64,000 nucleotides of DNA from Schmidtea polychroa (Eukaryota). The notes under the pieces were generated by a model that saw nothing but the letters and a program-made list of their open reading frames with translations, had not been told where the DNA came from and did not search any database. The stretch lies in NCBI GenBank assembly GCA_044892525.1, contig CM097886.1:141112001-141176000 (forward strand), in the 5' to 3' direction. Below are positions 17,504 to 52,946 of the stretch, piece by piece (position 1 is the first letter of the stretch; the number at the start of each line of letters is the position of its first letter). Position numbers and translations under genes: made by a program.

Positions 17504-17568
17504 TTTTACTCTGGCTCTAGTTCCTAAAGCTATTTTGTTTATTTCAATTTCTACCCGCTGATAATTGG

Positions 17569-17586: not shown

Positions 17587-17589
17587 AAA

Positions 17590-21760: not shown

Positions 21761-22574
21761 TGTTGGGTTTTGGATTATTTTAAGTCGGTTCTCTCTGACT
21801 CCTGTGTTCTTTAAATCAAACAATGAACGACCCAACGTATATTGAAACAACAGGTTCACAATTTATTATCACGCTACAATTACCAATCAAAGTTTTATAC
21901 GATTCTCCGCTCGGCGTTGATGCTTTGCAAACAAATAATATTCACCTTTTGATCCTTTAGCTTCTCTCGATTCACGTCTTCCTCGGTTTCTGTTTGGTTT
22001 GATTCCTTGTCACCTCTCCGTATTCTTAATTCTTTTTCTTCTTTTCCCTACTTTCCTAATTCGTCTACCAACTTTTCCTACAGTCTGATTCTTCGAACCC
22101 TAGCTGAGGCAGAATGCCGATTTTCTCTGATTTTCTCTTTGCTTATATACTCCTCGAAATCAGGATGACAAATGGTTATTGCCGAGCCAATCTTTCGTTT
22201 GACATTTTCTCGTACGTGTTTGCTTCGGCTGTCACCCATAATGGTCCAACGAATCCAGATAATTAATGGCCCTACCGGTCTTCCTACGCGCGCTATCTTC
22301 TCCTTACTCTTCCCATTAATCATTGTGTCAAGCTAATGGGCCCAAATCTTCCTTTTGTTTGCCTTTCTTCTTGTTTATCCAGCTCGGGTTTCCTTTATCT
22401 CTCGGGTTCTCCATTGGCTCGGGTTTCCCATTAGCTCGGGTTTTCCATTAGCCAATTAATTAATTAATTAACGTTTTCTGTTTTCATACGTTTGAATGTT
22501 TTTCGACCCTTCCTAACCATTTTCTGATAAATCCCTAATCATCATCTTGTTGACCATTAGCTAATCTATACCTG
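21761..22574. mobile_element. LTR-like segment (third family) that was the target of the giant element; continues at 52751-52946
   Basis: Begins TGTTGGG directly after a TA run and is split by the CCTG TSD. Confidence 0.4.
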
Positions 22575-25500
22575 TGTTGGGGTTACACCTCGGCTGACCA
22601 CTCTACCATGTTGACGGGTCTAAGGGTTGATTGTCCATCTCGAATAAAAGGTGCCACCGATTTGTCAACCTGGAGTGAAACCCCACATAACTTTCTTCCA
22701 ACATAGTGCCCGTGAATCACTTCACGTTGGTACTGCACTATGCAGGCGAGACGCCAGCAAGCAGGTGAGCTTCTGCCTTAAAACTACTCCTTGCTGAGGC
22801 CTCGACTTCCCGTTCACGACTGCCGATAGAAGGGCTTACGTCCATTTCCTTACACAACCACTTATCAGGACTCGCTGAATGCAAAGTGGGAATTTCTCAC
22901 TAGATCTTGCGGGTTCTCTACTCAACCCACTTAATTAAAGTCTAATTATTCATGAACGAAGACGTGTAAGACAACAAGATTTATTAATTTCAATGTTATG
23001 ACACAAGGATTCAGCTGTACACTTTACTAACGTTTGTCGAAAGAAGAGAAAACATCATAATCAACATAGATCGGATCCTTGTTCCTCATCCTGACCGCCA
23101 CTGGGATTTTATTGTTTCTCCCATTCAGTGTCGGCGAATAATTCGTCGAGGTTAAAAAACTCGGAAGCGTTCTCTTCCCACATTACGCCAGCGGCTGATA
23201 TGATTCGTGCCGAGGGTCCCGTTGTTAGGTCGATGGACACGTGAGAGTTGCCACCGTTGGTTGAGTCCTCTATTGATGGGATGTTTGGCTTTGCAGTAGC
23301 GCGCTCGCGCTGTCTCTTCTTGCGCTCTGCACGAGAGAGTTGTTTGCGCTTGGGTTTGCTTGAAGATGCCACTTGCAGAAGGGTGACTGATACAGATGGA
23401 CTAGCAGTGGGGGGCTTACTGGTACCCGTGATGACAACATCTGGTCGCTTGGGGGACAATTCGGTTTCGACGCAGTCTCGGCACGGTCTCTTGAACGGTG
23501 AGTTGGATTCGAGGAACGGTTGTGATGAGGCGGAAAGATGTCATCGGCCTCTCGGATGGGAATTTGCACTATTTTCCGGGTTGTAGCCGCCTGCACGTAA
23601 ACCTTATGCAGTGCCTCGGATTGTTCTCTGATTAGACTTCTTTGGGCACGGCTCTCAGATATTAGCGCGTCCCGGCAATGCTCGCTACGATCGAGCTTCT
23701 TTTGGATCTCTTTCATCCGAGCGGGACTAAACCATGTCCCTTCCAGCTCGTCTATCTTCCTCTTGTAACGTCCAATCTGAGTTTGTAGGTCCTTTATCAC
23801 CGTATTTTTATCCGCGCACGAGAAGCACGGCCGTAATGCTGATTTAGTGGTTGGTAGCATGCTTGCTATAAATAATACTAATGAAATGTAGAACATACGA
23901 TTTTAGAATAAATTAGATACGACCTACGGCCATTCGTGGATGCTTGACCGACGAAAAAAAAAAAAGGAAAACTCATTCTACAATCCGGTTTTACCACGGA
24001 TCTTATTTGTTGAAACAATTTATTTAACCAAATGCCATCGGTTTGACGCATGCTATTAACTTTGACTCTCTATTGATCTAACTGTATACATGAGGGGCGT
24101 AATAATTAATAGGGGGTAAATATAATATTGGTGAAACACTATAATAATGCTTTAGTAGAGGGACATTATAGTATGCGACTACACCTTGCTATAAATTATC
24201 TATTTAAATTTATTGCAAACAAATTACTATCGCTATTCTCAACATATTTTTTGATTCGAAATTTGTTATTGGAAGTGCACTTTTAATTCGGTAGTGAATG
24301 TGATTATCTATATTGTCTACCATTTGTCTGAGAATATGTGATGAGTTTACATCAGCCATTACTTGAACACCCTAATGGGATATCTCATCGGTCATAACAC
24401 ATGTCCAAATTTACGGATACTACTGTCGACTAGTTGATTACATTATCGACCTATTGTGAATGTCACGTGTCGCGACTATTATGTATGCTAGTCTGATATT
24501 TTGTGCTCTCACCACATGGATTCGCGTATGGCTACTATCTTATCTCACTCACTTGGTGTATGCCATTTTCACGGTGATTTTATCGATCCTGCTGTCGTAT
24601 GATTTTCTCTGCACAGTGATTTATTTGAGTTATGATTTATGCTACCGCCAGTTCTCATCGCGGAATTTTACCCTTATCAACTTGTGTGAATGACCATCAT
24701 CGTTTGGAAATTTATTGGATCTTTTCAGTGATCGTCGAGGGAATAATGCTACCAAATACTGAAGCATATTACTACTCTCGTCATTCTACTCGGATTTTCC
24801 TATTCAGATGTAATGCCGTCTCGATGAAACCTGCCCTTAGCCATTCGAAATTTTCTCTCAGGTTCAATAATTTGGATATATACAGTGATGACCTGGCTCT
24901 TATTGTAGAAATAAATGTTATTAATTAAATTTGGTGATATTTTACCTGTTTATAATTTTTGAAATAACTAAGTCTATAAAAACTTTCTGATTATAATACT
25001 AGAGAGGTTTTCGTAGAATCTCGCATTTTATAGTTTCGAGTTAGTTAAAGTTTTTAGAATACTTTCGTAACTTGACATACAATCTGGACAGGTTAGATGA
25101 CATTGGGTCTATGATAACGGAATTTCATACGAAATTAGTTCTACTGAGTCCGGCAAATAGACGTTGTCGCAATTAATTTGATAAAACCATGTTTCCAGAT
25201 GAAGTGTACTATGAGATGTTGTTATTTTTGACGAAGTTCACTAAATCGTGGTCTGGATCTCTTTTTTCAATAGGGGTAAGATTTACGAAAACGACTTGAC
25301 GAAAGAAAAAGGAATGCGACGCCCTCAGTCACTGTGCAAATCCTTGAAAATCCCTTCATTCGTACGACTATCTCTGTGAAAATCATTGTCTGCCAGCGAT
25401 TCTTTTAACCATGACCCCTTGTGATAATTTAGTCGCATCTTCAGCGATAGGACCCGTGAAGAAGCCTTCACATTTCGGCCCAATCTAGCTGCGTGATTGA

Positions 25501-26445
25501 AACACTCCATGTCCACCGGCTGAGCTCCCGAAGGCACCTCATACCATGACATGGAGTATCTCAACTCCACGTTACTCGTTAAATGAAAATTCATAAAATC
25601 TTTAATTCAAATAAAATACGGACATCTGGATAAAAATATTTTATTAATTCTGAAATACTTAGATAATACAAATTCCATCAATACATTAAAGTTATAAAAA
25701 TGGAGAATCAAATGAAGAGAGTTAACCAAAATGTTTAATCGTTAATATTTACCATTACTATTAGCTTTACAAATACTTAAATAAATCTATAAACAAATGA
25801 ACTACCCCTTACTATTGTTTAGGCTGAGTCAAAATTCAATGTTGTTCGTTCCAAATAGTTTGAATGGTGGTCCGTTGGATGTCGATTATTGTGATGAATG
25901 GTATTTCGGTCTCTGAACTGGTTTTGAATAGTCGTGGAGTTTTCTGAATGACGGTTGCTTGGCTAGTAGTGTCGATCCTATGAAATGCTCGGGGTTAACA
26001 GTAAAAACAGTAAACATTTTTCTTACCTATGAAATGCTCGGGGTTAACAGTAAATTTAATGTTTTTGGTAGTTGTATATATATCAAATTCTTATTTGTGC
26101 GGACCAATCAGAGTTGAGTACCGCTTATTTCTATTAATTTAATATAATTTTCTTGTTTTTAGGTTGTTTTTTCCTTATTTTCTTTATTTTTAATATGTTT
26201 TTCTATTTATTTCCTTAATTTCCTTATTATTTCTTGAATTCCTCTTTATTTATTTGTCAACTTGTTCTATTTTAATCTTTTCTTAATTTTATTTTTTGTT
26301 TTAATTCTTATGTCTTAATTATTATTTTCCTTATATCTTATTCTATTTTATTTCTGATTTTATTTATTTTATTATTATTTTTCTTAATGTTCTACTTCCC
26401 TACTTTCTTATTTCTCAACGATTAAATTCTCGACTCAGCCCAACA
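22575..26445 (-). repeat. 3' LTR (3871 bp)
   Basis: TGTTGGGGTTACAC...CAGCCCAACA. Differs from 48879-52750 by a 1-nt deletion at about 23510 and substitutions at about 23580 and 24913 (differences found by eye). Confidence 0.97.
23109..23896 (-). pseudogene. 3'-LTR copy of the LTR-encoded ORF, frameshifted
   Basis: Split into 208-aa and 116-aa ORFs by ggtgagttgg, versus ggtggagttgg in the 5' LTR. Confidence 0.85.
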
Positions 26446-26675
26446 AATCACTCGGGGACCCATCAAAATTGCGTCCCGCAATTGCATAATTAACTTAATT
26501 CATTCATTCAAAAAAAAAGAAATATAACACGAACACGGAAAATTATACAACAATGATAAAAATTTTATTGTAAGATCAAGGTCAAAGCAAGATCAAGCAA
26601 GTATCACTTAAGGTGATAGTTTGTACATACAATAAAAGTTTCCACATATAATAACACAAATGTTTGAGTTAGGGT

Positions 26676-27344
26676 TTATGAACTGTTAACCATTGATGCT
26701 TCTGCTGGCGGCTGTTGGTTGGTTTGGGTATTGATGTTGAGATAGGTCTGACTATTAGATTTCGGCTGGATTGGTTGATTACTCGGGGTTCGAGGTCGGA
26801 ATGGGGTTGGGTTAAGATTTGTCAGGGGCACTTCTTGAGGATTTTGGTTCGAGGTTACTCTTATTGATGTCGAGATTCTACATCTATTTCGAATTTCGTA
26901 AATTTTCATGAATATTGGTAGACATAGGAGGAGGGTCTCTGCGATCACCACATATATGAGATAATGGGTGTCATTGATCTCGGGAGGTGTTTTTGGCTTT
27001 TCTACAAGATTTTCAAAATCCTCTTGTTGCATTTGTTGTTCCAACTGGTCGATCTGTTGGCTTTGTTCGAAGATTTGTTTGTTTATCATTTTACAATTGG
27101 GGTTCTTTTTACACATTGTTTGGATGTTGTTGATGTGGGATCGGGTTGATTGAATGGTTTGGATGATATGGGTTTTCACGGTCATAGGGTATGTGCATTT
27201 GCCGGATTCTTGTTTAGGTTCTTGATTTTGATTGCGGTAATCTCGTACGATTTTCGGTTGGGCGTTTAATTGTTTGTTCTCCATCAGAATCATCAATACC
27301 ATCATTGTTATCATCATCTCGCCTCGCATGATACTATTATACAT
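26676..27344 (-). CDS. Element accessory ORF: putative type I membrane protein (222 aa)
   Basis: Hydrophobic N-terminus MMITMMVLMILM, Cys-containing helical ectodomain, TM-like YLIYVVIAETLLLCLPIFM and a Pro/Gln/Asn-rich tail. Confidence 0.7.
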   Translation of the reverse strand: MYNSIMRGEMMITMMVLMILMENKQLNAQPKIVRDYRNQNQEPKQESGKCTYPMTVKTHIIQTIQSTRSHINNIQTMCKKNPNCKMINKQIFEQSQQIDQLEQQMQQEDFENLVEKPKTPPEINDTHYLIYVVIAETLLLCLPIFMKIYEIRNRCRISTSIRVTSNQNPQEVPLTNLNPTPFRPRTPSNQPIQPKSNSQTYLNINTQTNQQPPAEASMVNSS

Positions 27345-27384
27345 TCATTATGTTTATTTACAATTGGTTTTAATGACCCTTAAT

Positions 27385-28137
27385 TTAATGGTTCTGATTT
27401 GGATTATTTTCACCGATTCTCATCAAGGTGGACTCTGCTTTAATTACCCTGTGTCTTAACTCGGGCAGCATTTCCAATTGTCGGTCTTTTTCACGGGCTT
27501 CTCTCTTTAGATGTCTAATTTCTTTTTCCAAGCGTCTAATTTCTTCCCTTTTCTTTTCAAGGTTTCTTTTTAGCTCGATTTGTAGGAGATCTTGTTCGTT
27601 TTCTTGCAGGTAATTTTGTTGTTGATGTTTTCTTTCTATTTCTCTATATTTGCGGACCCACTTCCTCATTTCTTTACTTTCCCGTTGGTTTTCTTCTAGT
27701 TGTCGTTTTAATTTATTTATAGCTGTTTGGCGCTCCTTCGCCTCAGTTTTCCAGTAGTCTTGGATTACCTCCTTTGCTTTGAAGCTTGCCCTCTCTTTCC
27801 ATAGCTCTTCCGCTATCTTTTCCCAGTTTTTCCCTCGCTTCCTTTGTTCGTGTAGCCATTCATTTTCCTCTTCCGTTTCTCTTTTTATTTCCCCCAACGC
27901 TTCGCACTCTTTCTTTAACACCTTTATCATTTTCCGGTCCTCCAGGTATTTGTTTATTAATCTTCCGTTTTCGTATTTCTCTTCCCGTAACTCGGCCTTT
28001 AGCGTTTGGGTTTCTGTTGTTTCTGCCTCAATCTCTCCCTCTTCTACGTCGCTCATAATTTCTATCGTTTCCTCGATTTTCATATCTATAATATGTACAG
28101 TTAATGGTGCGCTATAGTGCGACTTATACGTATACAT
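27385..28137 (-). CDS. Element accessory ORF: coiled-coil protein (likely start 28083)
   Basis: 250-aa ORF rich in E/K/R with heptad-like periodicity. Confidence 0.75.
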   Translation of the reverse strand: MYTYKSHYSAPLTVHIIDMKIEETIEIMSDVEEGEIEAETTETQTLKAELREEKYENGRLINKYLEDRKMIKVLKKECEALGEIKRETEEENEWLHEQRKRGKNWEKIAEELWKERASFKAKEVIQDYWKTEAKERQTAINKLKRQLEENQRESKEMRKWVRKYREIERKHQQQNYLQENEQDLLQIELKRNLEKKREEIRRLEKEIRHLKREAREKDRQLEMLPELRHRVIKAESTLMRIGENNPNQNH

Positions 28138-28251
28138 TGATATAAAATTTAATAGTTTGGGTTACAGTCCCTTGAATACTTTTACAATACTTTAATTTTT
28201 TTGTTTGGGATATACGTCCCGGTTTTTAGTTTTTCATCTTTTCATCCACCC

Positions 28252-29361
28252 TCATACGAAGGTTTCCTCCTGGCCTACATAACCTTCATCACTATCGACC
28301 GCGGGATGTAACTGTATCGCAATAGGGTCGTATGGTAGGTAATATTGGGGGATTTGAGCTCTCAATTCATTAATTTCGTCTCTTAGAGCTCGAGTGATGT
28401 TCAATTCCTCGTCGAGCAGATAGGTGAGATACCTTGTCTCTTCGTCTTTCGCCTCTATCTGTTTGTCTAGGGCCTTGATTTTCTCGTCGCCCTTCCATTT
28501 TTCAATTTCTATTTCTAAGTTTTTAATATTTTCGGTGTACATTTTCCTTTCGTTTTCTAATTTTCTGTTTTTTCCCGCTAGGACCATGTTTCTTTGTTCC
28601 AGCGATCCTTGTAATCCATTAAGGTCTCTTTTCATCTCTTCTACCTGATTTACTAATTCCACAACCCGTCCCGCTTGTTGGGTTATCATCTCTTCCATTG
28701 CGGCATTCTCGTGCTCTCTTATGTCGCACTTCATTGCCAAATGTCGCTCAAACTCCATAGCCTTTGTTTGCCAGGTTTGGCTTCGGGCGGCGACCTTTCT
28801 CAACCTTTTTAATTCTTCCTTTATTATTAAATTCTCCTCCCATTTACCTTGTTCGCTTTCATATCCGAGTCTCATGGGCAATTCTTTCATCTCTTTTTTC
28901 ATTTCTCTGTTTTGTCTTTTCCATTTTCTCGCTTCTGCCACTAAGTGCATCATTTTCCTGTCTTCTATTTGTTTTTCCGCTTCGCGCTTGGTGTTCTCAT
29001 CGGTAAGTCTTTTTCTCGCTTCCTGCACTAGCTGCTTTAAGTAGTGGCTGTGTGCTTCTTGGCGGGTATTTTCTAGTGACGCCCATTTTGATGCTCTTTT
29101 GCATGCTTCTGCTTCCGCTCTTAAGTTGTGTATTAACCATTGGTATTGACTATTCTCATCTTCTCTAGTTTCTTCGATGTGATTTCGGGTGAGATTAGTT
29201 AGTTGGAACATTACTTTGTTCCATTTTTTATTATGTTCTCGGGGAATTTGTGTCTTGTTGACATTGGTTGGGGCTATCGCAGTTTCGGTTATTTTCTCTT
29301 GTGTCATCTCTAAATCATAGACATCGATTAATCTTTTATTATGAAAAAGGAATTTATTCAT
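28252..29361 (-). CDS. Element accessory ORF: long coiled-coil protein (likely start 29307)
   Basis: 369-aa E/K/R-rich helical ORF. Confidence 0.75.
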   Translation of the reverse strand: MNKFLFHNKRLIDVYDLEMTQEKITETAIAPTNVNKTQIPREHNKKWNKVMFQLTNLTRNHIEETREDENSQYQWLIHNLRAEAEACKRASKWASLENTRQEAHSHYLKQLVQEARKRLTDENTKREAEKQIEDRKMMHLVAEARKWKRQNREMKKEMKELPMRLGYESEQGKWEENLIIKEELKRLRKVAARSQTWQTKAMEFERHLAMKCDIREHENAAMEEMITQQAGRVVELVNQVEEMKRDLNGLQGSLEQRNMVLAGKNRKLENERKMYTENIKNLEIEIEKWKGDEKIKALDKQIEAKDEETRYLTYLLDEELNITRALRDEINELRAQIPQYYLPYDPIAIQLHPAVDSDEGYVGQEETFV

Positions 29362-29499
29362 TATTTACTGTTTCTTGGGGAATTTTCGCATCATTTTTGG
29401 GTTTTCGTATTTAGGGTTTTCATACTATTATTATATAATATTTTATTGGTTATATACACCGATATATACAGATTATTATATACAACATTATTCGATTGG

Positions 29500-30888
29500 T
29501 TATTCCGTTCTACCCTTCTCCTCTTTCCTCACGGTCATCTTGATATATATGGTATCATTTCTCGCCATATCTTCCACTCTTTGTTGTGAGATGAACGTGG
29601 GTGCTCCTGTTGCTGATCCTTCTTCGTTGAGGGGCCTCTGGTAAGCTATTTGATTCCCCGTTGTTTTGAAGCTTTGCTCATGTATACTTTGGTTGTTCAT
29701 CAGAGTAATATCGATTTTTGCCTGGAACGGCCATTCTAATATTTCGTCGTATTCTCCTTTACATAACAGAAAGAAAATCGAAAAGTGCGTGTTTAATCCG
29801 GTTCCGTCCCCGTTGGGATATATCTTCATTTTCATTTTGTACCCATTTTTCCAAGAGTGGAATGTAGGACTTGTTATTCTTGTCTCTTCTCCGGTTTTTG
29901 CTTTTCGTATTCTTTCTTTTACTCCCGTTATTTTCCATATGTAGGGTGCTGTTGGGGTTATCTCATTTAGATTTATTTCCCGTATTTTCTGATGTAGCTC
30001 CTTGGCCTGATTATTACTGATTTCTGTTCGGTTTATTTGCATCTTTATGTTTGCTCGGGCTTCTTCGAACGCTTTCCTTTCTTCTAGTAGTTCTTTGACT
30101 AACACTTTCAACGATGTTATCTCTATCTCCATTTGTTTTACTTTCTCTTCGCTTTCTTGTAACGCAGTCGACCACATTTCTGCGTGAGTTGAAGCATTTT
30201 CTACTAAATGATGTGGTAACTCACCTCGGTGTAGTAATTTCTGACAACCCCATCTACCTAGTACACATGTCATTCTTTTCTTTTCGCATTCCCTTAGATG
30301 CTGTGCCACCTTCATTATTTCCCCTTGGTTACATCCGTTTGGGCATTCCCCACTGAACTCCGCACATACTCTCTCCTCTTGGACATTGTGATGTTTGAGG
30401 GTGAGATTTATCCACGTATCTATTTCTCCACAGTGTTCACATCTTTCTAATCTCTCTTCACACTGCTTTTGATGTTCTTTCTCTTCGCTTGCTCGAATGG
30501 TTTTATGGCACCTTTCACACTGGCCAATTCTGTACATACATTCTCCCATATGTTGTACTACCTTCCATATTACTCCTTTCCATTCGCATGGGGCATTTTT
30601 GCATCCCAGGTTGGTGTTTAACATGTCTTTCACTGCGGCTTTATCCTCGTTAGTGTCTTCTAAACTCGATATTAGTGTCTCTTTACACACCGGGCACCTC
30701 TGTGGTCTATTCTTTATTGCTTCACTGATACATTCTTTACATACTCTGCATCCACATTGCGTTTGGTGAGGTTCCTTTAACAGCTTTTCACATATTCCGC
30801 ACGTAACATGTTTGTGTATTCTGATCGTTGTAGATTTTCGGACTTGCTCGACAATCTCTCTGAACTCTTCTCTTTGTCGTTTATCCAT
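29500..30888 (-). CDS. TRAF: TNF receptor-associated factor (TRAF2/3/5-like), full length, carried by the retroelement
   Basis: N-terminal RING (CGIC...CGCRVCKEC...CPVC), TRAF zinc fingers (CKNAPCEWKG...HMGEC; CPNGC...HLREC), coiled coil and MATH domain (YIWKI, SPTFH, GYKMKMKIYPNGDG, HFSIFFLLCKGEYDEILEWPF, DTIYIKMTV). No introns. Confidence 0.93.
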   Translation of the reverse strand: MDKRQREEFREIVEQVRKSTTIRIHKHVTCGICEKLLKEPHQTQCGCRVCKECISEAIKNRPQRCPVCKETLISSLEDTNEDKAAVKDMLNTNLGCKNAPCEWKGVIWKVVQHMGECMYRIGQCERCHKTIRASEEKEHQKQCEERLERCEHCGEIDTWINLTLKHHNVQEERVCAEFSGECPNGCNQGEIMKVAQHLRECEKKRMTCVLGRWGCQKLLHRGELPHHLVENASTHAEMWSTALQESEEKVKQMEIEITSLKVLVKELLEERKAFEEARANIKMQINRTEISNNQAKELHQKIREINLNEITPTAPYIWKITGVKERIRKAKTGEETRITSPTFHSWKNGYKMKMKIYPNGDGTGLNTHFSIFFLLCKGEYDEILEWPFQAKIDITLMNNQSIHEQSFKTTGNQIAYQRPLNEEGSATGAPTFISQQRVEDMARNDTIYIKMTVRKEEKGRTE

Positions 30889-30973
30889 TCTATAATTATA
30901 TGTACAAATAGTTCTTATCGATACAGGTTCGATATTTTATTTACAATTATTTACATTTTAAGCTAGGTTTGGT

Positions 30974-31357
30974 TTAGGGTTCGGAAGAGTCGGCTTCGTG
31001 TCCGCTCTCCTCTCTATTCATTAGCCATTCCGACCAGTCTTCTATTTCTGTCTGTTCTGCTTCCTCCATCATTCTGTCTATTTCAATTTCCTGTCGACGG
31101 CTATATTGGGTTATCCTCTCTATCTCTCTTTGCATTTGTTCGATTTTTACCCTCTGGTCTTCAATTATCTTCAAATAACTAAATCCTCTGTTCATACTCT
31201 CGATCAGGTTTCTGTGCATCGTCAGTCCTTGTTCTTGCAAATTGGACACTAATTGTGCTAATACGGCACATTGTTGCTTCCATAATTCTTCAGTTACTGT
31301 ATTGTGGTTCATTTCGTTATTTCCTTGATCCATTCCTAATTTATATACACTTTTCAA
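30974..31357 (-). CDS. Element accessory ORF: small coiled-coil protein with acidic tail (likely start 31333)
   Basis: 127-aa ORF in the same sense as the others, bounded by short AT-rich spacers. Confidence 0.65.
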   Translation of the reverse strand: MKSVYKLGMDQGNNEMNHNTVTEELWKQQCAVLAQLVSNLQEQGLTMHRNLIESMNRGFSYLKIIEDQRVKIEQMQREIERITQYSRRQEIEIDRMMEEAEQTEIEDWSEWLMNREESGHEADSSEP

Positions 31358-31494
31358 CTCTTATGTAAATTTAATTTTATTTTATGATTCCCGTTATTGT
31401 ATAATATTGATACCGCGCTTATATAGAGATATAGTACTGTTATATACATTAAGATATACTTACTTTTTACAATTATATACAGTCATATTCCTTT

Positions 31495-45348: not shown

Positions 45349-46659
45349 GATTGGTGTTCTAGGTTCGTCTGTTTCTTTTAAATTGTCTAACGATGTGATT
45401 AAACTTTGGGCTGATAATTCCTCGGTTGACGTTGCTAAACTATTAGTGATATCGGACAGACTTTCTCTACTTCGAGATCGACTAGGGGTATATCCGAGAT
45501 TTTCTTGGTCGAATATGGGTACTTGATTGGTTCTTCTGGATCCTTGTGATATTCCTCTTTGATGTTTAATGGATCGTCCTCTTTTGAGTTGTTGTAATTC
45601 GTCTCCTGAAAATTATACGTCTCCGGGCTTACTAGAAGATCTAAGATTGGGTTTATCCGTGATTCCTTTCTTACGCTTCTTGGTAATTAGCGGCTATTGA
45701 ATTGGACGCGTTCGGTTCTGATTGTGTTTCCTTCGATAAATATTCTGTATGAATCTGCTACTGAGATCCTGAGGAGATTTACTAATCCTTGGCAGATGGC
45801 TGCTAATACTTCTTCCGTTCTGGAGTCTTCCGGTTGCTGTGTCTCTCGGTGCGGGTTCTGAATGGATTTATCCTTGGTTGATTGTCGATTTTCTTCGAAT
45901 TCCTTTTGTGCAGGTTCTGGATTGTCTTGGTTGGCTGGATTGGCTTGATATCTAAAATGAAAAAATGATCTCGTGTTGCATTTGCTTACACGACTTCATC
46001 ATTCTTTCTACAACATTCAAAAACAGACACCTTTTAGGTTTCTGTTTGTGCTTCCCCTATCTTTTGTGAAATCCTTTCTGCGGGTTATAATATCCCATCA
46101 GCCCGTATTTTCCGTCGATTTTAAATTATCTATATGGGGTAGTAACAATTATCTATAAAGTCGTAATAATTATCTATTCGTTATCAATTATAGTAAAAAT
46201 AGGTCGTTGTCGGTCTCTGCTTATTACCCCCCTTCGTTTTCTTATTCCTTTGCGCTGTTGTCGCTGTTTTACTTTTCGTATTTACTATTATCCCACTCGG
46301 TACTACTCTGGAACCGATAAACATACATTTTCCCGGTTTACCCAAAAAAAAATTCCGTAGAGTTTCTCTACTTCACTGGGATCCCTTTAATTAGTTAGTT
46401 ACTTTCCTCTTTACTCATTATCATTGTTTCATCTATTCTTTATTTTCTATTATCTCTTTAATTCGTTTCCTTCTTCCCTTTCCTTTTTCCTTATAATCTT
46501 ATTTTCTTTTCCACGAGCTCGTTTATTTCCTCTCTAAACTCGAATTTTCAAAATTACATTCAATTTGTTCTAGCTAGCTTTAATATTCCATATCACTAGT
46601 AATTTAAATATTATCTCATTGTAGCTTAACTGCTATCTCTCGCTTTTCTAGGCCTTTAC

Positions 46660-47470
46660 GACTGGCTGGCAGCTCAATCTTCTTCTCAGCTCAATCTTCT
46701 TCCTTCTGATCGGTTAGACTATTCAACAACTCGATCTTACGACTGGCTGGCACTATTCAACAGCTCAATCTTCTTCCTTCTGATCGGTTGGACTATTCAA
46801 CAACTCGATCTTACGACTGGCTGGCACTATTCAACAGCTCAATCTTCTTCCTTCTGATCGGTTGGACTATTCGACAACTCGATCTTACGACTGGCTGGCA
46901 CTATTCAACAGCTCAATCTTCTTCCTTCTGATCGGTTGGACTATTCAACAACTCGATCTTACGACTGGCTGGCACTATTCAACAGCTCAATCTTCTTCCT
47001 TCTGATCGGTTGGACTATTCAACAACTCGATCTTACGACTGGCTGGCACTATTCAACAGCTCAATCTTCTTCCTTCTGATCGGTTGGACTATTCAACAAC
47101 TCGATCTTACGACTGGCTGGCACTATTCAACAGCTCAATCTTCCTCCTTCCTGATCGGTTGGACTTTTCACAACTCGACCTTACGACTGGCTGGCACTAT
47201 TCAACAGCTCAATCTTCCTCTTTCCTGATCGGTTGGACTTTTCACAACTCGACCTTACGACTGGCTGGCACTATTCAACAGCTCAATCTTCCTCCTTCCT
47301 GATCGGTTGGACTTTTCACAACTCGACCTTACGACTGGCTGGCACTATTCAACAGCTCAATCTTCCTCCTTCCTGATCGGTTGGACTTTTCACCACTCGA
47401 CCTTACGACTGGCTGGCACTATTCAACAGCTCAGTCTTCCTCCTTGACCGGCTGGATTATTCGACAGCTC
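46660..47470. repeat. 74-bp tandem array (about 10 copies plus partials) in the element leader
   Basis: gactggctgg recurs at 46741, 46815, 46889, 46963, 47037, 47111, 47185, 47259, 47333 and 47407. Confidence 0.97.
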
Positions 47471-48050
47471 GGCTTCAATATTCCTTGCTCTGCATGCTTC
47501 TATTTCTCTTTTCTTCTTTTACTCTAGTTTACCATTTTCTCTGTCTACTTTTAATTTGTCGACTTAATCTTTACCGCTTGGGAGTGTTTCCCCTTTTCCC
47601 CCCTTGCTCAAAACGCACGACGATCGCGATGATCCATTTCTACATTGGCATGGTGATCAGTCATGTCGCAAAAACTTCTCATCATATGCGATGGTACCCC
47701 GCCCTACGCTTCTTACTTGGGTTGATCAGTTATCCCCTCCCAACGGGTTCTTGCAATAAGACGTACCGCCCGAAGGTGGCTCGGTTTGTACCCCTGCAGT
47801 CTATATTGGGACTAATTCCACGTTATTCCACCCTCTCTTCATTTGATTCCAAAAAAAAAATAAAACAAAACAAACACGCAAATATTCATTCGTCATGCAA
47901 ATTTTATTAGTCCTAATCATCAAAACTTTTTAAAGACGAATTTATTTATCATAAACATAAAGATTGAATCATTAACAGTACGTGTTACCTCAACAATTTC
48001 ATGCATTCTTGTTCAAACATCGTATACTTGCTGTTACATCGCCGGCCGTT

Positions 48051-48536
48051 TCATTCGCCATAATAGACCATATGGGTCTCTTTTATTTCATATTTGCACA
48101 TCGTGCATCTTTTTAGGTCTTTTACACACTCTTCACAGTGACTGAGGTGTCCACACGGCAAGAATAATACGCGAATAGGACGGAGTTTGCAGGCTATACA
48201 AGTTCGTAATTGGTTAACTTTTTCCTGTATTTTTTGTTCGATTGCATCTGGTATTGTATTTAGTGAGTCTTTTAGACGCTGATAATCTAGATTTAATGTT
48301 GGGTGGTTCAATCTCTCTTGATACCACTGATATACGGTTTCGGGGTTTATTTTTCCATCTGGGCGACTTAGGCCTGTGGCTAATATCATATGATTAGGTA
48401 CGACTGGTGTTTGTCCGATTGCTTGCAGTAATATCGCGTTGATTTTTTCTCTTTTATGCGTCAGTGTTGTTAGGGAGTCGTTTTCTATATCGATAAACTT
48501 GAGCAGTTGTTGCATTTGGTTCGCGAATTCTGTCAT
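48051..48536 (-). CDS. IAP/MDM2-type C-terminal RING finger protein without BIR (161 aa), upstream of gag
   Basis: CIACKLRPIRVLFLPCGHLSHCEECVKDLKRCTMCKYEIKETHMVY at the extreme C-terminus, matching the IAP RING pattern (C..C....v.F.PCGH..C..C...l..CP.Cr..I). Confidence 0.85.
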   Translation of the reverse strand: MTEFANQMQQLLKFIDIENDSLTTLTHKREKINAILLQAIGQTPVVPNHMILATGLSRPDGKINPETVYQWYQERLNHPTLNLDYQRLKDSLNTIPDAIEQKIQEKVNQLRTCIACKLRPIRVLFLPCGHLSHCEECVKDLKRCTMCKYEIKETHMVYYGE

Positions 48537-48853
48537 AGCTGTTGGAAAAGTAATGTTTTAATAATATGTAGTAAATTAATAGTTAATTCGTTAATTGGTT
48601 TCTTTAACCATTGTTAATTATTTAATTTGACTACTTTATCTCCTTTATTTATATATATCCTTAATTTTCCTATTATCTATATTTTGATTTTCTCTACTTA
48701 GTTCCTAATGTAATTTAATAATCAATAGTCACTTTGCATTCGTCAAGCAATGGTCGGTTGAAAATAGAAAATCGATGTGATAAATCCCTTTAATTTTGTA
48801 TGAAACTCCCGGTGAATTTCGCATTCGTTAATAGAAATTTCGATCGACTGTAG

Positions 48854-48871
48854 ATCCCGGCTGAGCCCCCA
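48854..48871 (-). promoter_or_regulatory. Primer-binding site, tRNA-Pro type
   Basis: Minus strand TGGGGGCTCAGCCGGGAT versus the canonical tRNA-Pro PBS TGGGGGCTCGTCCGGGAT (16/18), 7 nt inside the 5' LTR boundary. Confidence 0.8.
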
Positions 48872-49412
48872 AAAATCATGTTGGGGTTACACCTCGGCTG
48901 ACCACTCTACCATGTTGACGGGTCTAAGGGTTGATTGTCCATCTCGAATAAAAGGTGCCACCGATTTGTCAACCTGGAGTGAAACCCCACATAACTTTCT
49001 TCCAACATAGTGCCCGTGAATCACTTCACGTTGGTACTGCACTATGCAGGCGAGACGCCAGCAAGCAGGTGAGCTTCTGCCTTAAAACTACTCCTTGCTG
49101 AGGCCTCGACTTCCCGTTCACGACTGCCGATAGAAGGGCTTACGTCCATTTCCTTACACAACCACTTATCAGGACTCGCTGAATGCAAAGTGGGAATTTC
49201 TCACTAGATCTTGCGGGTTCTCTACTCAACCCACTTAATTAAAGTCTAATTATTCATGAACGAAGACGTGTAAGACAACAAGATTTATTAATTTCAATGT
49301 TATGACACAAGGATTCAGCTGTACACTTTACTAACGTTTGTCGAAAGAAGAGAAAACATCATAATCAACATAGATCGGATCCTTGTTCCTCATCCTGACC
49401 GCCACTGGGATT

Positions 49413-50201
49413 TTATTGTTTCTCCCATTCAGTGTCGGCGAATAATTCGTCGAGGTTAAAAAACTCGGAAGCGTTCTCTTCCCACATTACGCCAGCGGCT
49501 GATATGATTCGTGCCGAGGGTCCCGTTGTTAGGTCGATGGACACGTGAGAGTTGCCACCGTTGGTTGAGTCCTCTATTGATGGGATGTTTGGCTTTGCAG
49601 TAGCGCGCTCGCGCTGTCTCTTCTTGCGCTCTGCACGAGAGAGTTGTTTGCGCTTGGGTTTGCTTGAAGATGCCACTTGCAGAAGGGTGACTGATACAGA
49701 TGGACTAGCAGTGGGGGGCTTACTGGTACCCGTGATGACAACATCTGGTCGCTTGGGGGACAATTCGGTTTCGACGCAGTCTCGGCACGGTCTCTTGAAC
49801 GGTGGAGTTGGATTCGAGGAACGGTTGTGATGAGGCGGAAAGATGTCATCGGCCTCTCGGATGGGAATTTGCACTATTTTCCGGTTTGTAGCCGCCTGCA
49901 CGTAAACCTTATGCAGTGCCTCGGATTGTTCTCTGATTAGACTTCTTTGGGCACGGCTCTCAGATATTAGCGCGTCCCGGCAATGCTCGCTACGATCGAG
50001 CTTCTTTTGGATCTCTTTCATCCGAGCGGGACTAAACCATGTCCCTTCCAGCTCGTCTATCTTCCTCTTGTAACGTCCAATCTGAGTTTGTAGGTCCTTT
50101 ATCACCGTATTTTTATCCGCGCACGAGAAGCACGGCCGTAATGCTGATTTAGTGGTTGGTAGCATGCTTGCTATAAATAATACTAATGAAATGTAGAACA
50201 T
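49413..50201 (-). CDS. LTR-encoded 262-aa protein of unknown function
   Basis: Hydrophobic N-terminus, CFSC and CRDC pairs, coiled coil, basic KPKRK...RKKRQRER stretch and acidic-aromatic C-terminus. A diverged homolog at 5744-6257 supports coding function. Confidence 0.75.
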   Translation of the reverse strand: MFYISLVLFIASMLPTTKSALRPCFSCADKNTVIKDLQTQIGRYKRKIDELEGTWFSPARMKEIQKKLDRSEHCRDALISESRAQRSLIREQSEALHKVYVQAATNRKIVQIPIREADDIFPPHHNRSSNPTPPFKRPCRDCVETELSPKRPDVVITGTSKPPTASPSVSVTLLQVASSSKPKRKQLSRAERKKRQRERATAKPNIPSIEDSTNGGNSHVSIDLTTGPSARIISAAGVMWEENASEFFNLDELFADTEWEKQ

Positions 50202-52379
50202 ACGATTTTAGAATAAATTAGATACGACCTACGGCCATTCGTGGATGCTTGACCGACGAAAAAAAAAAAAGGAAAACTCATTCTACAATCCGGTTTTACC
50301 ACGGATCTTATTTGTTGAAACAATTTATTTAACCAAATGCCATCGGTTTGACGCATGCTATTAACTTTGACTCTCTATTGATCTAACTGTATACATGAGG
50401 GGCGTAATAATTAATAGGGGGTAAATATAATATTGGTGAAACACTATAATAATGCTTTAGTAGAGGGACATTATAGTATGCGACTACACCTTGCTATAAA
50501 TTATCTATTTAAATTTATTGCAAACAAATTACTATCGCTATTCTCAACATATTTTTTGATTCGAAATTTGTTATTGGAAGTGCACTTTTAATTCGGTAGT
50601 GAATGTGATTATCTATATTGTCTACCATTTGTCTGAGAATATGTGATGAGTTTACATCAGCCATTACTTGAACACCCTAATGGGATATCTCATCGGTCAT
50701 AACACATGTCCAAATTTACGGATACTACTGTCGACTAGTTGATTACATTATCGACCTATTGTGAATGTCACGTGTCGCGACTATTATGTATGCTAGTCTG
50801 ATATTTTGTGCTCTCACCACATGGATTCGCGTATGGCTACTATCTTATCTCACTCACTTGGTGTATGCCATTTTCACGGTGATTTTATCGATCCTGCTGT
50901 CGTATGATTTTCTCTGCACAGTGATTTATTTGAGTTATGATTTATGCTACCGCCAGTTCTCATCGCGGAATTTTACCCTTATCAACTTGTGTGAATGACC
51001 ATCATCGTTTGGAAATTTATTGGATCTTTTCAGTGATCGTCGAGGGAATAATGCTACCAAATACTGAAGCATATTACTACTCTCGTCATTCTACTCGGAT
51101 TTTCCTATTCAGATGTAATGCCGTCTCGATGAAACCTGCCCTTAGCCATTCGAAATTTTCTCTCAGGTTCAATAATTTGGATATATACAGTGATGACCTG
51201 GCTCTTATTGTAGAAATTAATGTTATTAATTAAATTTGGTGATATTTTACCTGTTTATAATTTTTGAAATAACTAAGTCTATAAAAACTTTCTGATTATA
51301 ATACTAGAGAGGTTTTCGTAGAATCTCGCATTTTATAGTTTCGAGTTAGTTAAAGTTTTTAGAATACTTTCGTAACTTGACATACAATCTGGACAGGTTA
51401 GATGACATTGGGTCTATGATAACGGAATTTCATACGAAATTAGTTCTACTGAGTCCGGCAAATAGACGTTGTCGCAATTAATTTGATAAAACCATGTTTC
51501 CAGATGAAGTGTACTATGAGATGTTGTTATTTTTGACGAAGTTCACTAAATCGTGGTCTGGATCTCTTTTTTCAATAGGGGTAAGATTTACGAAAACGAC
51601 TTGACGAAAGAAAAAGGAATGCGACGCCCTCAGTCACTGTGCAAATCCTTGAAAATCCCTTCATTCGTACGACTATCTCTGTGAAAATCATTGTCTGCCA
51701 GCGATTCTTTTAACCATGACCCCTTGTGATAATTTAGTCGCATCTTCAGCGATAGGACCCGTGAAGAAGCCTTCACATTTCGGCCCAATCTAGCTGCGTG
51801 ATTGAAACACTCCATGTCCACCGGCTGAGCTCCCGAAGGCACCTCATACCATGACATGGAGTATCTCAACTCCACGTTACTCGTTAAATGAAAATTCATA
51901 AAATCTTTAATTCAAATAAAATACGGACATCTGGATAAAAATATTTTATTAATTCTGAAATACTTAGATAATACAAATTCCATCAATACATTAAAGTTAT
52001 AAAAATGGAGAATCAAATGAAGAGAGTTAACCAAAATGTTTAATCGTTAATATTTACCATTACTATTAGCTTTACAAATACTTAAATAAATCTATAAACA
52101 AATGAACTACCCCTTACTATTGTTTAGGCTGAGTCAAAATTCAATGTTGTTCGTTCCAAATAGTTTGAATGGTGGTCCGTTGGATGTCGATTATTGTGAT
52201 GAATGGTATTTCGGTCTCTGAACTGGTTTTGAATAGTCGTGGAGTTTTCTGAATGACGGTTGCTTGGCTAGTAGTGTCGATCCTATGAAATGCTCGGGGT
52301 TAACAGTAAAAACAGTAAACATTTTTCTTACCTATGAAATGCTCGGGGTTAACAGTAAATTTAATGTTTTTGGTAGTTG

Positions 52380-52413
52380 TATATATATCAAATTCTTATT
52401 TGTGCGGACCAAT
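52380..52413 (-). promoter_or_regulatory. Putative LTR core promoter (CCAAT box plus TATA-like box)
   Basis: CCAAT at 52409-52413 and TATATATAT at 52380-52388, in the correct order for minus-strand transcription. Mirrored at 26104-26108 and 26075-26083. Confidence 0.4.
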
Positions 52414-52946
52414 CAGAGTTGAGTACCGCTTATTTCTATTAATTTAATATAATTTTCTTGTTTTTAGGTTGTTTTTTCCTTATTTTCTTTATTTTTAATA
52501 TGTTTTTCTATTTATTTCCTTAATTTCCTTATTATTTCTTGAATTCCTCTTTATTTATTTGTCAACTTGTTCTATTTTAATCTTTTCTTAATTTTATTTT
52601 TTGTTTTAATTCTTATGTCTTAATTATTATTTTCCTTATATCTTATTCTATTTTATTTCTGATTTTATTTATTTTATTATTATTTTTCTTAATGTTCTAC
52701 TTCCCTACTTTCTTATTTCTCAACGATTAAATTCTCGACTCAGCCCAACACCTGTCCCGTTTTTCCCATTCGATTTCGATGATTTTTCCATTTATTGATT
52801 TTTCTCGGATTTCCGGATTCTCGCCTTTCGTAATTGCTTTTTGCATTTTCTAATACTGTTTCCATCACACTTTCCTTTACTATTGATTCTGTGCGCAATC
52901 CCGCTTTTATTTGTCTTTTTTTCTTCGCTTACTTTCTATTTGAATT

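What the first reader, a model, noticed from the sequence alone, without database searches (positions are those of the whole stretch)
22575..52750. Enveloped giant retroelement carrying a cell-death / TNF-NF-kB / ubiquitin toolkit
Seen: between the two LTRs lie a full TRAF, an IAP-type RING, a Bcl-2-like segment, ankyrin repeats and three ubiquitin-like folds, alongside gag, env and pol. Established: TRAFs and cIAP RING ligases act together in TNF-receptor/NF-kB complexes, Bcl-2 proteins block mitochondrial apoptosis, IkB-like ankyrins inhibit NF-kB, and large DNA viruses capture exactly these functions. Inference: the element has assembled a virus-like kit to keep host cells (for example stem or germ cells) alive or to mute innate immunity, far beyond ordinary Gypsy cargo.
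Basis: partly seen in the sequence, partly recalled or inferred. Interest (0 to 1): 0.95.

Follow-up and report, generated by a model that had tools for sequence, protein, structure and literature searches.

The report
Intact planarian-type Burro giant retroelement
This is an intact, recently inserted 30-kb Gypsy-type retrovirus-like element of the already published planarian "Burro" kind, whose envelope gene and TRAF, IAP-type RING, ankyrin and ubiquitin-like cargo are real but were described before and remain functionally untested.

Summary
The coordinates are right. Two 3.87-kb LTRs (99.92% identical), flanked by a 4-bp target duplication, bound a 30,176-bp element on the minus strand. One unbroken 4,617-aa ORF carries gag, three CCHC knuckles, an in-frame envelope glycoprotein, PR-RT-RNaseH-IN and ankyrin repeats. 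Separate ORFs encode a full TRAF and a cIAP-type RING protein.

- **Confirmed:** LTRs, gag, env, pol, TRAF, IAP-type RING (no BIR domain) and ankyrin repeats.
- **Ubiquitin-like folds:** one of three is supported by a predicted structure, one only weakly by sequence, and one not at all.
- **Bcl-2-like segment:** inconclusive, with only sub-threshold signals.

This architecture matches the giant "Burro" Gypsy elements of planarians (Jurka 2007; Grohme 2018; Arkhipova & Yushenova 2019, PMC6431247). That paper lists MATH/TRAF, BIR, BCL2-like, SUMO-like, ankyrin and in-frame env, and already suggests meddling with host apoptosis and ubiquitination.

This copy differs in arrangement: TRAF is a stand-alone gene downstream of pol. 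The specific TNF/NF-kB, IkB and TRAF-cIAP readings are not supported. The host and sister copies could not be retrieved. Verdict: real and remarkable, but already known.

The parts
48879..52750 (-). 5' LTR (element reads on the minus strand), 3,872 bp, TG...CA termini
22575..26445 (-). 3' LTR, 99.92% identical to the 5' LTR (2 mismatches, 1 gap)
22571..22574 (.). Target-site duplication CCTG (left copy); the right copy is at 52751-52754
   Evidence: read directly
52751..52754 (.). Target-site duplication CCTG (right copy)
48853..48871 (-). Primer-binding-site-like 19 nt starting TGG, 7 nt downstream of the 5' LTR; its complement ends in CCA like a tRNA 3' end
   Evidence: read directly; the tRNA was not identified (no tRNA gene in the window)
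48051..48536 (-). Accessory ORF of 161 aa upstream of gag. It has a C-terminal cIAP-type RING (residues about 105-156, window 48069-48224). The N-terminal 100 aa have no match and there is no BIR domain
46613..47500 (.). Tandem array of a 74-bp unit (about 10.6 copies by TRF, 46687-47471) in the leader between the RING ORF and gag
31495..45348 (-). ORF1, one uninterrupted 4,617-aa polyprotein (no stops or frameshifts): gag - Ubl/Bcl-2-like region - env - PR - RT - RNase H - IN - ankyrin - unknown C-terminus
44443..45195 (-). Gag: Retrotrans_gag (residues 52-145) and three CCHC zinc knuckles (252-302)
43129..43359 (-). Candidate ubiquitin-like segment 1 (residues 664-740). Conserved in relative P0014, but no profile or confident structural support
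42577..42840 (-). Ubiquitin-like segment 2 (residues 837-924). It is the only confident beta-grasp in the predicted model, which matches ubiquitin, SUMO and Ubl domains by Foldseek. Conserved in P0014
41659..41889 (-). Candidate ubiquitin-like segment 3 (residues 1154-1230). Sub-threshold Pfam ubiquitin hit and weak similarity to segment 2
40669..41124 (-). All-helical Bcl-2-like candidate (residues 1409-1560), with sub-threshold evidence only
38659..40590 (-). Env in frame within ORF1 (residues about 1587-2230). It has an internal Met followed by a signal-peptide-like segment (1599-1613), a Monjiviricetes_fusion glycoprotein domain, a furin-like RxKR site and a transmembrane anchor (2178-2196)
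37885..38160 (-). Aspartic protease (RVP, residues 2397-2488; DTG motif present)
36745..37221 (-). Reverse transcriptase (RVT_1, residues 2710-2868; YIDD motif present)
36169..36558 (-). RNase H (residues 2931-3060)
35329..35847 (-). Integrase: H2C2 zinc-binding domain and rve core (residues 3168-3340)
33139..34479 (-). Two blocks of ankyrin repeats (residues about 3624-3734 and 3953-4070), of generic ANK type
31498..33138 (-). C-terminal 547 residues of ORF1 with no family match and two moderately hydrophobic segments
30974..31357 (-). ORF of 127 aa (TTG start as listed) with no family match; coding status uncertain
29500..30888 (-). Full-length TRAF gene (462 aa): RING (30-68), TRAF-type zinc-finger region (to about 155), coiled coil and MATH/TRAF-C (316-453)
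28252..29361 (-). Accessory ORF of 369 aa, charged and coiled-coil-like, with no family match
27385..28137 (-). Accessory ORF of 250 aa, charged and coiled-coil-like, with no family match
26676..27344 (-). Accessory ORF of 222 aa with one predicted transmembrane segment and no family match

Best explanation
The region is one complete, recently integrated copy of a Burro-type giant Ty3/Gypsy LTR retroelement. This is an endogenous retrovirus-like element of the kind described in dugesiid planarians.

Shown:
- It has the full machinery of an LTR retroelement: long LTRs, a tRNA-type primer-binding site, gag with three zinc knuckles, and PR-RT-RNaseH-IN with catalytic motifs present.
- It carries a viral fusion glycoprotein gene fused in frame between gag and pol.
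- It carries a full TRAF gene, a cIAP-type RING gene, ankyrin arrays and at least one ubiquitin-like domain.

Inferred:
- It multiplies by transcription from the 5' LTR, tRNA-primed reverse transcription and integrase-mediated insertion. The 4-bp duplication is the footprint of that insertion.
- The polyprotein is cut by its own protease.
- Env reaches the secretory pathway through its internal signal-peptide-like segment. This could happen within the polyprotein or from a shorter message starting at the in-frame Met just upstream.
- The cargo domains derive from host genes and act on host ubiquitin-dependent survival signalling. TRAF and the RING would act as E3 or adaptor modules, and the Ubl and ankyrin domains as interaction modules. 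My confidence in this functional step is about 0.4.
For: Structure of the element:
- LTR pair, target duplication and termini.
- Uninterrupted 4,617-aa ORF with the domain order gag-env-PR-RT-RH-IN-Ank.
- CCHC x3, DTG, YIDD and HHCC motifs.
- Pol is 40-51% identical to metazoan Ty3/Gypsy pols.
- Env matches at E 2e-71, with a signal-like segment, a transmembrane anchor and a furin-like site.
- TRAF, cIAP-type RING, Ubl fold, and a 74-bp tandem array in the leader.

Relatives:
- A whole-library HMMER search of residues 401-1600 found only two relatives.
- P0014 shares the Ubl1-Ubl2 region at 32-34% identity. It carries a MATH domain in frame where this copy has an acidic linker.
- P0015 joins the same region to a TRAF-type zinc finger.
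- So the TRAF module belongs to this element lineage, either inside or outside the polyprotein.

Literature:
- PMC6431247 (section 7) describes Burro elements. They exceed 30 kb, have a 4,873-5,140-aa ORF1, three CCHC knuckles and env in frame between gag and pol. Their cargo includes MATH_TRAF, BIR, BCL2-like, SUMO-like and ankyrin domains, plus tandem repeats and accessory ORFs that may alternatively exist as subdomains.
- BURRO1 is transcribed and held down by the PIWI protein SMEDWI-2 (PMC8532177).
- Host TRAFs control cell survival in S. mediterranea (PMC7586133).
Against: - The host species was not identified by any tool. No reference Burro sequence was available to compare, and the only relatives found are 32-51% identical and of unknown organism.
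- BIR and dUTPase, both reported for Burro1, were not detected here.
- TRAF lies downstream of pol. That is neither the Burro1 arrangement (inside ORF1) nor the D. tigrina arrangement (upstream ORF).
- No polypurine tract is obvious next to the 3' LTR.
- Nothing here bears on whether the cargo proteins are made or what they do.
Confidence: 0.88

Rival explanations
1. A composite locus: an ordinary Gypsy element into, or next to, which host genes (TRAF, a RING gene, an ankyrin gene) happen to lie. It would be bracketed by two separate LTRs or joined by misassembly.
For: No sister copy could be retrieved to show the cargo travels with the element. TRAF and RING are separate ORFs with their own start codons.
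Against: - The LTRs are 99.92% identical and flanked by the same 4-bp duplication, which marks a single insertion event.
- There are no gaps inside the element.
- All ORFs lie on one strand, tightly packed, with the same A-rich coding bias.
- The ankyrin, Ubl and env parts are in the same unbroken reading frame as gag and pol.
- Relatives P0014 and P0015 carry TRAF modules fused into the homologous polyprotein.
- The published Burro descriptions match (PMC6431247).
Confidence: 0.04
2. A provirus of a still-circulating, infectious planarian retrovirus-like agent, rather than a purely intragenomic retrotransposon.
For: The env reading frame is intact, with signal-like, fusion-protein and anchor features. 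The LTRs are near-identical, which indicates very recent integration. PMC6431247 raises the provirus hypothesis.
Against: There is no evidence of particles, of horizontal spread or of env expression. Only one N-glycosylation sequon occurs in env. Env sits inside a cytosolic polyprotein with no stop of its own. Burro is reported in thousands of genomic copies, which intragenomic amplification explains equally well (PMC6431247).
Confidence: 0.3
3. The cargo domains serve the element's own replication (particle assembly, trafficking, polyprotein stability, nuclear import) rather than manipulating host cell death or immunity.
For: - Ubl, ankyrin and coiled-coil modules are general protein-interaction devices.
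- The Ubl1-Ubl2 block lies between gag and env and is conserved at 32% identity in P0014.
- The Bcl-2 assignment is not significant.
- There is no BIR domain.
- The ankyrin repeats are generic.
Against: A complete TRAF (RING, zinc fingers, coiled coil, MATH) and a cIAP-type RING are signalling or E3 modules with no known role in retroelement replication. Host TRAFs govern survival in planarians (PMC7586133).
Confidence: 0.3

Closest known systems
[quoted passage not shown] 2018; Arkhipova & Yushenova 2019, PMC6431247)
   Same: - A Gypsy-like LTR element of more than 30 kb with multi-kb LTRs.
- One giant ORF1 with gag, three CCHC knuckles, env in frame before PR, and PR-RT-RH-IN.
- Ankyrin repeats, Ubl/SUMO-like and BCL2-like regions.
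- A TRAF/MATH module, an IAP-related module and tandem repeats.
   Different: - ORF1 is 4,617 aa here (4,873 aa reported).
- TRAF here is a complete stand-alone gene downstream of pol, not a MATH domain inside ORF1.
- Only the RING of an IAP is present, with no BIR.
- No dUTPase was detected between PR and RT.
- Sequence identity to the reference could not be measured.
Burro-like element of Dugesia (Girardia) tigrina (PMC6431247)
   Same: A giant ORF1 without MATH, and MATH/TRAF encoded by a separate accessory ORF.
   Different: There the accessory ORF is upstream, ORF1 is 5,140 aa with two CCHC knuckles, and a midasin-like region is present. Here TRAF is downstream, there are three knuckles, and no midasin match was seen.
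Env-bearing Ty3/Gypsy elements of insects (gypsy and other errantiviruses) and env-bearing nematode LTR elements
   Same: An LTR retroelement that has acquired a viral fusion glycoprotein gene.
   Different: In those elements env is a separate ORF downstream of pol. They are 7-10 kb long and carry no signalling cargo.
Ogre elements of plants
   Same: Giant size with very long LTRs and extra ORFs.
   Different: A plant lineage with no env and no TRAF, RING or ankyrin cargo. Much of its size is non-coding.
Large DNA viruses carrying captured IAP, Bcl-2 or ankyrin genes (baculoviruses, herpesviruses, poxviruses)
   Same: Host-derived cell-death and ubiquitin modules carried by a mobile or viral genome. 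This is an analogy of function only.
   Different: There is no common descent. Those are DNA viruses, their IAPs have BIR domains, and their Bcl-2 homologues are structurally proven. Here BIR is absent and Bcl-2 is unproven.

Membership tests
Ty3/Gypsy (Metaviridae-type) LTR retroelement | Domain order PR-RT-RNase H-IN in pol, with catalytic motifs | tested here: met
   Pfam order RVP 2397-2488, RVT_1 2710-2868, RNase H 2931-3060, IN 3168-3340. DTG, YIDD and HHCC motifs present. Pol is 40-51% identical to Ty3/Gypsy pols.
Ty3/Gypsy (Metaviridae-type) LTR retroelement | Direct LTRs with TG...CA ends, a short target duplication and a PBS next to the 5' LTR | tested here: met
   4-bp CCTG duplication and a 19-nt PBS-like segment. 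A polypurine tract is not obvious.
Burro-type giant planarian Gypsy elements | Total length over 30 kb with an internal region up to about 25 kb | tested here: met
   30,176 bp in total, with 22.4 kb internal.
Burro-type giant planarian Gypsy elements | A single giant ORF1 with N-terminal gag plus CCHC knuckles and env in frame between gag and pol | tested here: met
   4,617-aa ORF, gag 52-145, three knuckles, env about 1587-2230.
Burro-type giant planarian Gypsy elements | Cargo: MATH/TRAF, ankyrin, Ubl/SUMO-like | tested here: met
Burro-type giant planarian Gypsy elements | Cargo: BIR, BCL2-like, dUTPase | tested here: inconclusive
   BIR not found. dUTPase not found. Bcl-2 is only sub-threshold.
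Burro-type giant planarian Gypsy elements | Sequence homology to reference Burro/GYPSM1 outside pol | not testable with these tools
   No reference sequence was reachable. The nearest proteins are P0014 and P0015 (32-51% identity, organism unknown).
Burro-type giant planarian Gypsy elements | Host is a dugesiid planarian | not testable with these tools
   The flanks have 18-33% G+C, consistent with the reported >70% A/T of S. mediterranea (PMC11410931). No host gene was identified.
TRAF proteins | N-terminal RING, TRAF-type zinc fingers, coiled coil and C-terminal MATH/TRAF-C | tested here: met
   Pfam RING 30-68 and MATH 316-453. PDB TRAF6 RING-zinc-finger match over residues 28-155. TRAF2 and TRAF3 coiled-coil-plus-TRAF-C match over residues 245-454.
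IAP (BIRC) proteins | At least one BIR domain | tested here: not met
   No BIR in the 161-aa ORF or in any other minus-strand reading frame upstream of gag.
IAP (BIRC) proteins | C-terminal RING of the zf-C3HC4_3 type | tested here: met
   Pfam E 3.4e-11. cIAP2 and cIAP1 RINGs are the best PDB matches.
Bcl-2 family | A Bcl-2 helical bundle with BH1 and BH2 regions recognisable by profile or structure | tested here: inconclusive
   PF00452 at 15.2-15.6 bits against a cut-off of 31.4. Eight predicted helices but pLDDT 48. Foldseek best E is 1.3, with Mcl-1, sponge BHP2 and a herpesvirus Bcl-2 recurring at E 2.6-5. No phmmer hit.
Ubiquitin-like (beta-grasp) domains | A beta-grasp fold matching ubiquitin, SUMO or Ubl structures | tested here: met
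   Segment 2 only, inferred. The model as a whole has pLDDT 46; residues 837-924 are its only confident beta-grasp (pLDDT 60-76). Foldseek gave E 3e-5, TM 0.7-0.77 and 215 hits at E<=1e-3, but reports no query positions. Segment 3 is sub-threshold. Segment 1 is unsupported.
IkB proteins | Ankyrin domain specifically related to IkB or NF-kB-precursor ankyrin domains | tested here: not met
   The best 60 of 192 PDB matches are latrotoxins, ankyrins, Kidins220, NompC, TRPA1 and designed repeat proteins. No IkB is among them.

The most novel reading that the evidence does not exclude
This copy represents an undescribed Burro lineage or arrangement. The TRAF module exists as a complete, separately encoded gene downstream of pol, and an IAP-type RING gene sits upstream of gag. 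In relatives (P0014, P0015) the TRAF parts are fused into the polyprotein. If so, signalling modules are shuffled between polyprotein and accessory-gene positions. It would also mean that part of the reported 'TRAF/MATH expansion' of planarian gene sets (PMC6109357) is element-borne rather than host-owned.
Probability: 0.35. Interest if true: 0.45.

Novelty: already known. Interest (0 to 1): 0.3.

Why it matters
Burro elements are the largest LTR retroelements known. They are the only ones reported with an envelope gene fused between gag and pol, and they carry host-like survival and ubiquitin signalling modules.

An apparently pristine copy such as this one (near-identical LTRs, every reading frame open) is a good descriptive reference for how such an element is organised. 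It also shows how modules move between the polyprotein and separate genes.

What the cargo does is a real open question. This finding does not open it, because it was posed in 2007 and again in 2019. The practical point is for annotation: TRAF, RING and ankyrin 'genes' inside such elements should not be counted as host genes.

Tried and rejected
Searches for sister copies and relatives:
- Exact-sequence look-up of all six proteins found none in the collection.
- A word-indexed search with the whole polyprotein returned only pol-level matches of at most 41% identity.
- A search with the TRAF ORF gave one hit at 35% identity.
- A search with pol alone gave generic Gypsy pols of at most 51% identity, with no host identified.
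- A full HMMER scan of 1.84 billion representatives with residues 401-1600 found only P0014 and P0015. Their contigs are not on record, and they are known only as unnamed UniParc entries.
- Scans of viral contigs with env and of metagenome contigs with the Ubl-region alignment found no relatives.
- As a result, co-occurrence in sister copies and dN/dS could not be tested.

Tests of individual domains:
- Bcl-2: a single-sequence AlphaFold2 model was of low confidence, and Foldseek and phmmer were not significant.
- Ubl: a profile of segments 2 and 3 searched against PDB gave only designed proteins and a non-significant MoaD hit. hhalign among the three segments gave only weak 2-3 similarity.
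- BIR: looked for in all minus-strand frames upstream of gag and in the LTR, and not found.
- dUTPase: looked for between PR and RT, and not found.
- Accessory ORFs of 369, 250, 222 and 127 aa, and the ORF1 C-terminus: no family or PDB match.

Other negative results:
- Rfam and tRNA scans of the window found nothing.
- Grohme et al. 2018 could not be read, so its content is cited only through PMC6431247.

The 'chimeric assembly' reading was rejected because of the matching target duplication, the near-identical LTRs and the unbroken frame.

Full report
**1. What is there**

A self-comparison of the window shows two direct repeats of 3,872 bp at 22575-26445 and 48879-52750. They differ by two mismatches and one gap, which is 99.92% identity.

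Each repeat starts TGTTGG and ends CCAACA. The four bases CCTG flank the pair on both sides, at 22571-22574 and 52751-52754. Seven bases inside the right-hand repeat, on the minus strand, lies a 19-nt stretch beginning TGG whose complement ends in CCA. This is a tRNA-type primer-binding site. No N run lies within the element; the nearest are at 17990-18131 and 52947-53085, and these were left untouched.

G+C is 34-45% inside the element against 18-33% in most of the flanks. The coding strand is strongly A-rich throughout the internal 22 kb.

**2. Genes**

All substantial ORFs lie on the minus strand. In 5'-to-3' order:
- A 161-aa ORF (48536-48051).
- A 74-bp tandem array of about 10.6 units.
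- One uninterrupted ORF of 4,617 aa (45348-31495).
- ORFs of 127 aa, 462 aa (30888-29500), 369 aa, 250 aa and 222 aa.
- The 3' LTR.

None of these reading frames contains a stop or needs a frameshift, so the number of breaks in the element's genes is zero. A 262-aa ORF inside the 5' LTR is 208 aa in the 3' LTR, because of the single indel between the LTRs.

**3. The polyprotein**

Pfam assigns the following, all above the curated cut-offs:
- Retrotrans_gag (residues 52-145) and zf-CCHC.
- Monjiviricetes_fusion viral glycoprotein (two stretches over about 1600-2207; E 1.5e-66 for the whole ORF, 2e-71 for the excised piece).
- RVP (2397-2488), RVT_1 (2710-2868), RNase H (2931-3060), and integrase H2C2 plus rve (3168-3340).
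- Ankyrin repeats (3642-4058).

Three CCHC knuckles and the DTG, YIDD and HHCC motifs are present. Pol is an ordinary Ty3/Gypsy pol, with best database identities of 40-51%.

The env segment has several expected features:
- An in-frame Met followed by a signal-peptide-like hydrophobic stretch (1599-1613), exactly where the glycoprotein match begins.
- A furin-like RxKR site.
- A strong transmembrane anchor (2178-2196).
- A raised cysteine density, but only one N-glycosylation sequon.

**4. The claimed cargo, item by item**

*TRAF: confirmed.* The 462-aa ORF has a RING and a MATH domain (E 2e-27). Against solved structures it matches TRAF2, TRAF3 and TRAF1 coiled-coil plus TRAF-C at E about 5e-28. 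Its residues 28-155 match the TRAF6 RING-zinc-finger region at 1e-14.

*IAP-type RING: confirmed as a RING only.* The match is zf-C3HC4_3 at E 3e-11, and the best solved relatives are the cIAP2 and cIAP1 RINGs. No BIR domain exists in that ORF or in any other minus-strand frame upstream of gag, including the LTR. The protein is therefore not an IAP by the family's defining feature.

*Ankyrin: confirmed, in two blocks.* The nearest solved proteins are latrotoxins, ankyrins, Kidins220, NompC, TRPA1 and designed repeats. No IkB is among the best 60.

*Ubiquitin-like folds: partly confirmed.*
- The region 655-1240 was folded with its only two relatives as the alignment, giving a poor model overall (pLDDT 46).
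- Residues 837-924 reached pLDDT 60-76 with a strand-strand-helix-strand-strand pattern.
- Foldseek returned 215 matches at E<=1e-3, all of the listed ones being ubiquitin, SUMO, ubiquilin, BAG6-Ubl, ISG15 or NEDD8, with target TM-scores of 0.7-0.77.
- The tool does not report which residues matched. I assign the match to this segment because it is the only confident beta-grasp in the model and the aligned lengths (82-95) fit it.
- Segment 1154-1230 has a sub-threshold Pfam ubiquitin hit (E 0.0033, 17.6 bits against 25.4) and weak local similarity to the second segment (hhalign P 7.5e-4).
- Segment 664-740 has no profile support and only a low-confidence secondary-structure pattern.

*Bcl-2-like: inconclusive.*
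- PF00452 scores 15.2-15.6 bits (E 0.025-0.033) against a cut-off of 31.4, although it covers profile positions 28-100.
- The single-sequence model predicts eight helices, but at pLDDT 48.
- Foldseek has no hit better than E 1.3. Mcl-1, a sponge Bcl-2 homologue and a herpesvirus Bcl-2 recur among the non-significant matches.
- phmmer against PDB finds nothing.

*Other parts.* A dUTPase between PR and RT was not detected. The 369-aa and 250-aa ORFs are highly charged and look like coiled coils. The 222-aa ORF has one predicted membrane segment. None of these, nor the last 547 residues of the polyprotein, matches any family.

**5. Relatives**

The exact proteins are not in the 15-billion-sequence collection.

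A full HMMER pass over 1.84 billion cluster representatives, using residues 401-1600, found two proteins only:
- **P0014** (882 aa) aligns at 32-34% identity across the first two Ubl segments and the helical regions around them. It then carries a MATH domain that is 36% identical to the MATH of this element's TRAF ORF. That domain is inserted where this element has a 40% acidic linker. The alignment then resumes before the third Ubl segment.
- **P0015** joins the post-Ubl2 segment (51% identity) to a TRAF-type zinc finger.

P0013, the single hit of the TRAF ORF, is a RING plus zf-TRAF fragment. All three are unnamed UniParc-only entries with no contig on record.

These proteins show that the Ubl block and the TRAF module belong together in this element lineage. 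They also show that the TRAF module can sit inside the polyprotein or outside it. No related locus was found in viral or metagenome contigs. Co-occurrence across full sister copies and selection on the cargo therefore could not be measured.

**6. Comparison with what is known**

Section 7 of Arkhipova & Yushenova 2019 (PMC6431247) describes the Burro elements of the planarian Schmidtea mediterranea (Grohme et al. 2018; first catalogued as GYPSM1 by Jurka in 2007):
- They are Gypsy-like, exceed 30 kb and are present in thousands of copies.
- ORF1 is 4,873 aa and begins with gag and three CCHC knuckles.
- They contain MATH_TRAF_C, BIR, a RING-related motif, Smc-like coiled coil, ankyrin repeats, a BCL2-like motif, a SUMO-like domain and a dUTPase.
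- An env related to mononegavirus fusion glycoproteins lies in frame between gag and pol ('the first case').
- They carry tandem repeats.

[quoted passage not shown] They also say the apoptosis and ubiquitination domains suggest Burro meddles with the host systems.

The element in this window matches that description feature for feature (see the membership table). It differs in having a complete TRAF gene downstream of pol, in the absence of BIR and dUTPase, and in ORF1 length.

Further planarian literature gives context:
- BURRO1 RNA is intestine-enriched and de-repressed when the PIWI protein SMEDWI-2 is depleted (PMC8532177).
- Host TRAFs are needed for cell survival (PMC7586133).
- MATH/TRAF domains are reported as strongly expanded in the S. 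mediterranea transcriptome (PMC6109357).

I could not identify the host with the tools. The A/T-rich flanks fit the reported >70% A/T of S. mediterranea (PMC11410931), but that is weak evidence.

**7. How it most likely works**

*Shown.* This is a structurally complete LTR retroelement whose near-identical LTRs and intact frames indicate a very recent insertion.

*Inferred from established retroelement biology.* It is transcribed from the 5' LTR, reverse transcription is tRNA-primed, and integration leaves the 4-bp duplication. The protease releases the polyprotein's parts.

*Inferred from the sequence.* Env can enter the secretory pathway through its own signal-like segment. It may do so co-translationally within the polyprotein or from a shorter message starting at the Met just upstream.

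*Speculative (about 0.4).* TRAF and the cIAP-type RING act as ubiquitin-ligase or adaptor modules, and the Ubl and ankyrin parts as interaction modules, on host survival signalling. The alternative, that they serve the element's own assembly or trafficking, is not excluded.

The more specific TNF-receptor/NF-kB, IkB and TRAF-cIAP readings have no support here.

**8. Verdict**

The residual novelty is the particular gene arrangement of this copy, and the possibility that element-borne TRAFs inflate planarian TRAF counts.

**Transparency**

For BLAST comparisons my scripts wrote unaltered sub-stretches of the window to scratch files. No repaired, consensus or joined sequence was made. One search was a plain one-frame translation across three neighbouring ORFs with the stops shown, and it was used only to read their composition.

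Noticed in passing
window 49413-50201 (minus; 5' LTR) and 23270-23896 (3' LTR); homolog at window 5900-6236 (minus): The LTR itself holds a 262-aa ORF with no family match, shortened to 208 aa in the other LTR by the single indel between them. A 42-47% identical protein-level match lies about 17 kb away in the left flank. This suggests either a related LTR remnant or a real LTR-borne gene.
   Followed up: partly
window 1191-1885 and 17173-17970: A pair of direct repeats of about 700-800 bp, 88-91% identical and about 16 kb apart, ending at the N gap at 17990. They may be the LTRs of an older element. A CCHC-knuckle-like fragment lies at 613-918 on the minus strand.
   Followed up: partly
window 18950-21123 (+): Two overlapping ORFs (546 and 191 aa) in a stretch richer in G+C than the flanks, just left of the element. 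They have no Pfam match and no similarity to the element's proteins.
   Followed up: partly
window 62396-63103 (-): A 235-aa ORF with a hAT-family C-terminal dimerisation domain (E 1e-11), which is a DNA-transposon remnant.
   Followed up: no
window 59371-59624 / 60034-60287, and 55961-56692 / 8452-9217: An inverted repeat pair of 254 bp (96% identical), and an inverted dispersed repeat of about 750 bp (84% identical) shared between the right and left flanks.
   Followed up: no
proteins P0013, P0014, P0015 (database entries, organism unknown): These unnamed database proteins look like gene models cut out of Burro-like polyproteins, since they join Ubl-region sequence to MATH or TRAF zinc fingers. 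Planarian transcriptome papers report a large TRAF/MATH expansion (PMC6109357). Part of that count may be element-borne.
   Followed up: partly
window 40546-40590 (minus; polyprotein residues about 1587-1601): An in-frame Met lies 12 residues before the signal-peptide-like start of env. A separate shorter env message would be compatible with this, but no splice evidence was sought.
   Followed up: no
window 22381-22452: A 17-bp tandem repeat (4.2 copies) lies immediately outside the left end of the element.
   Followed up: no
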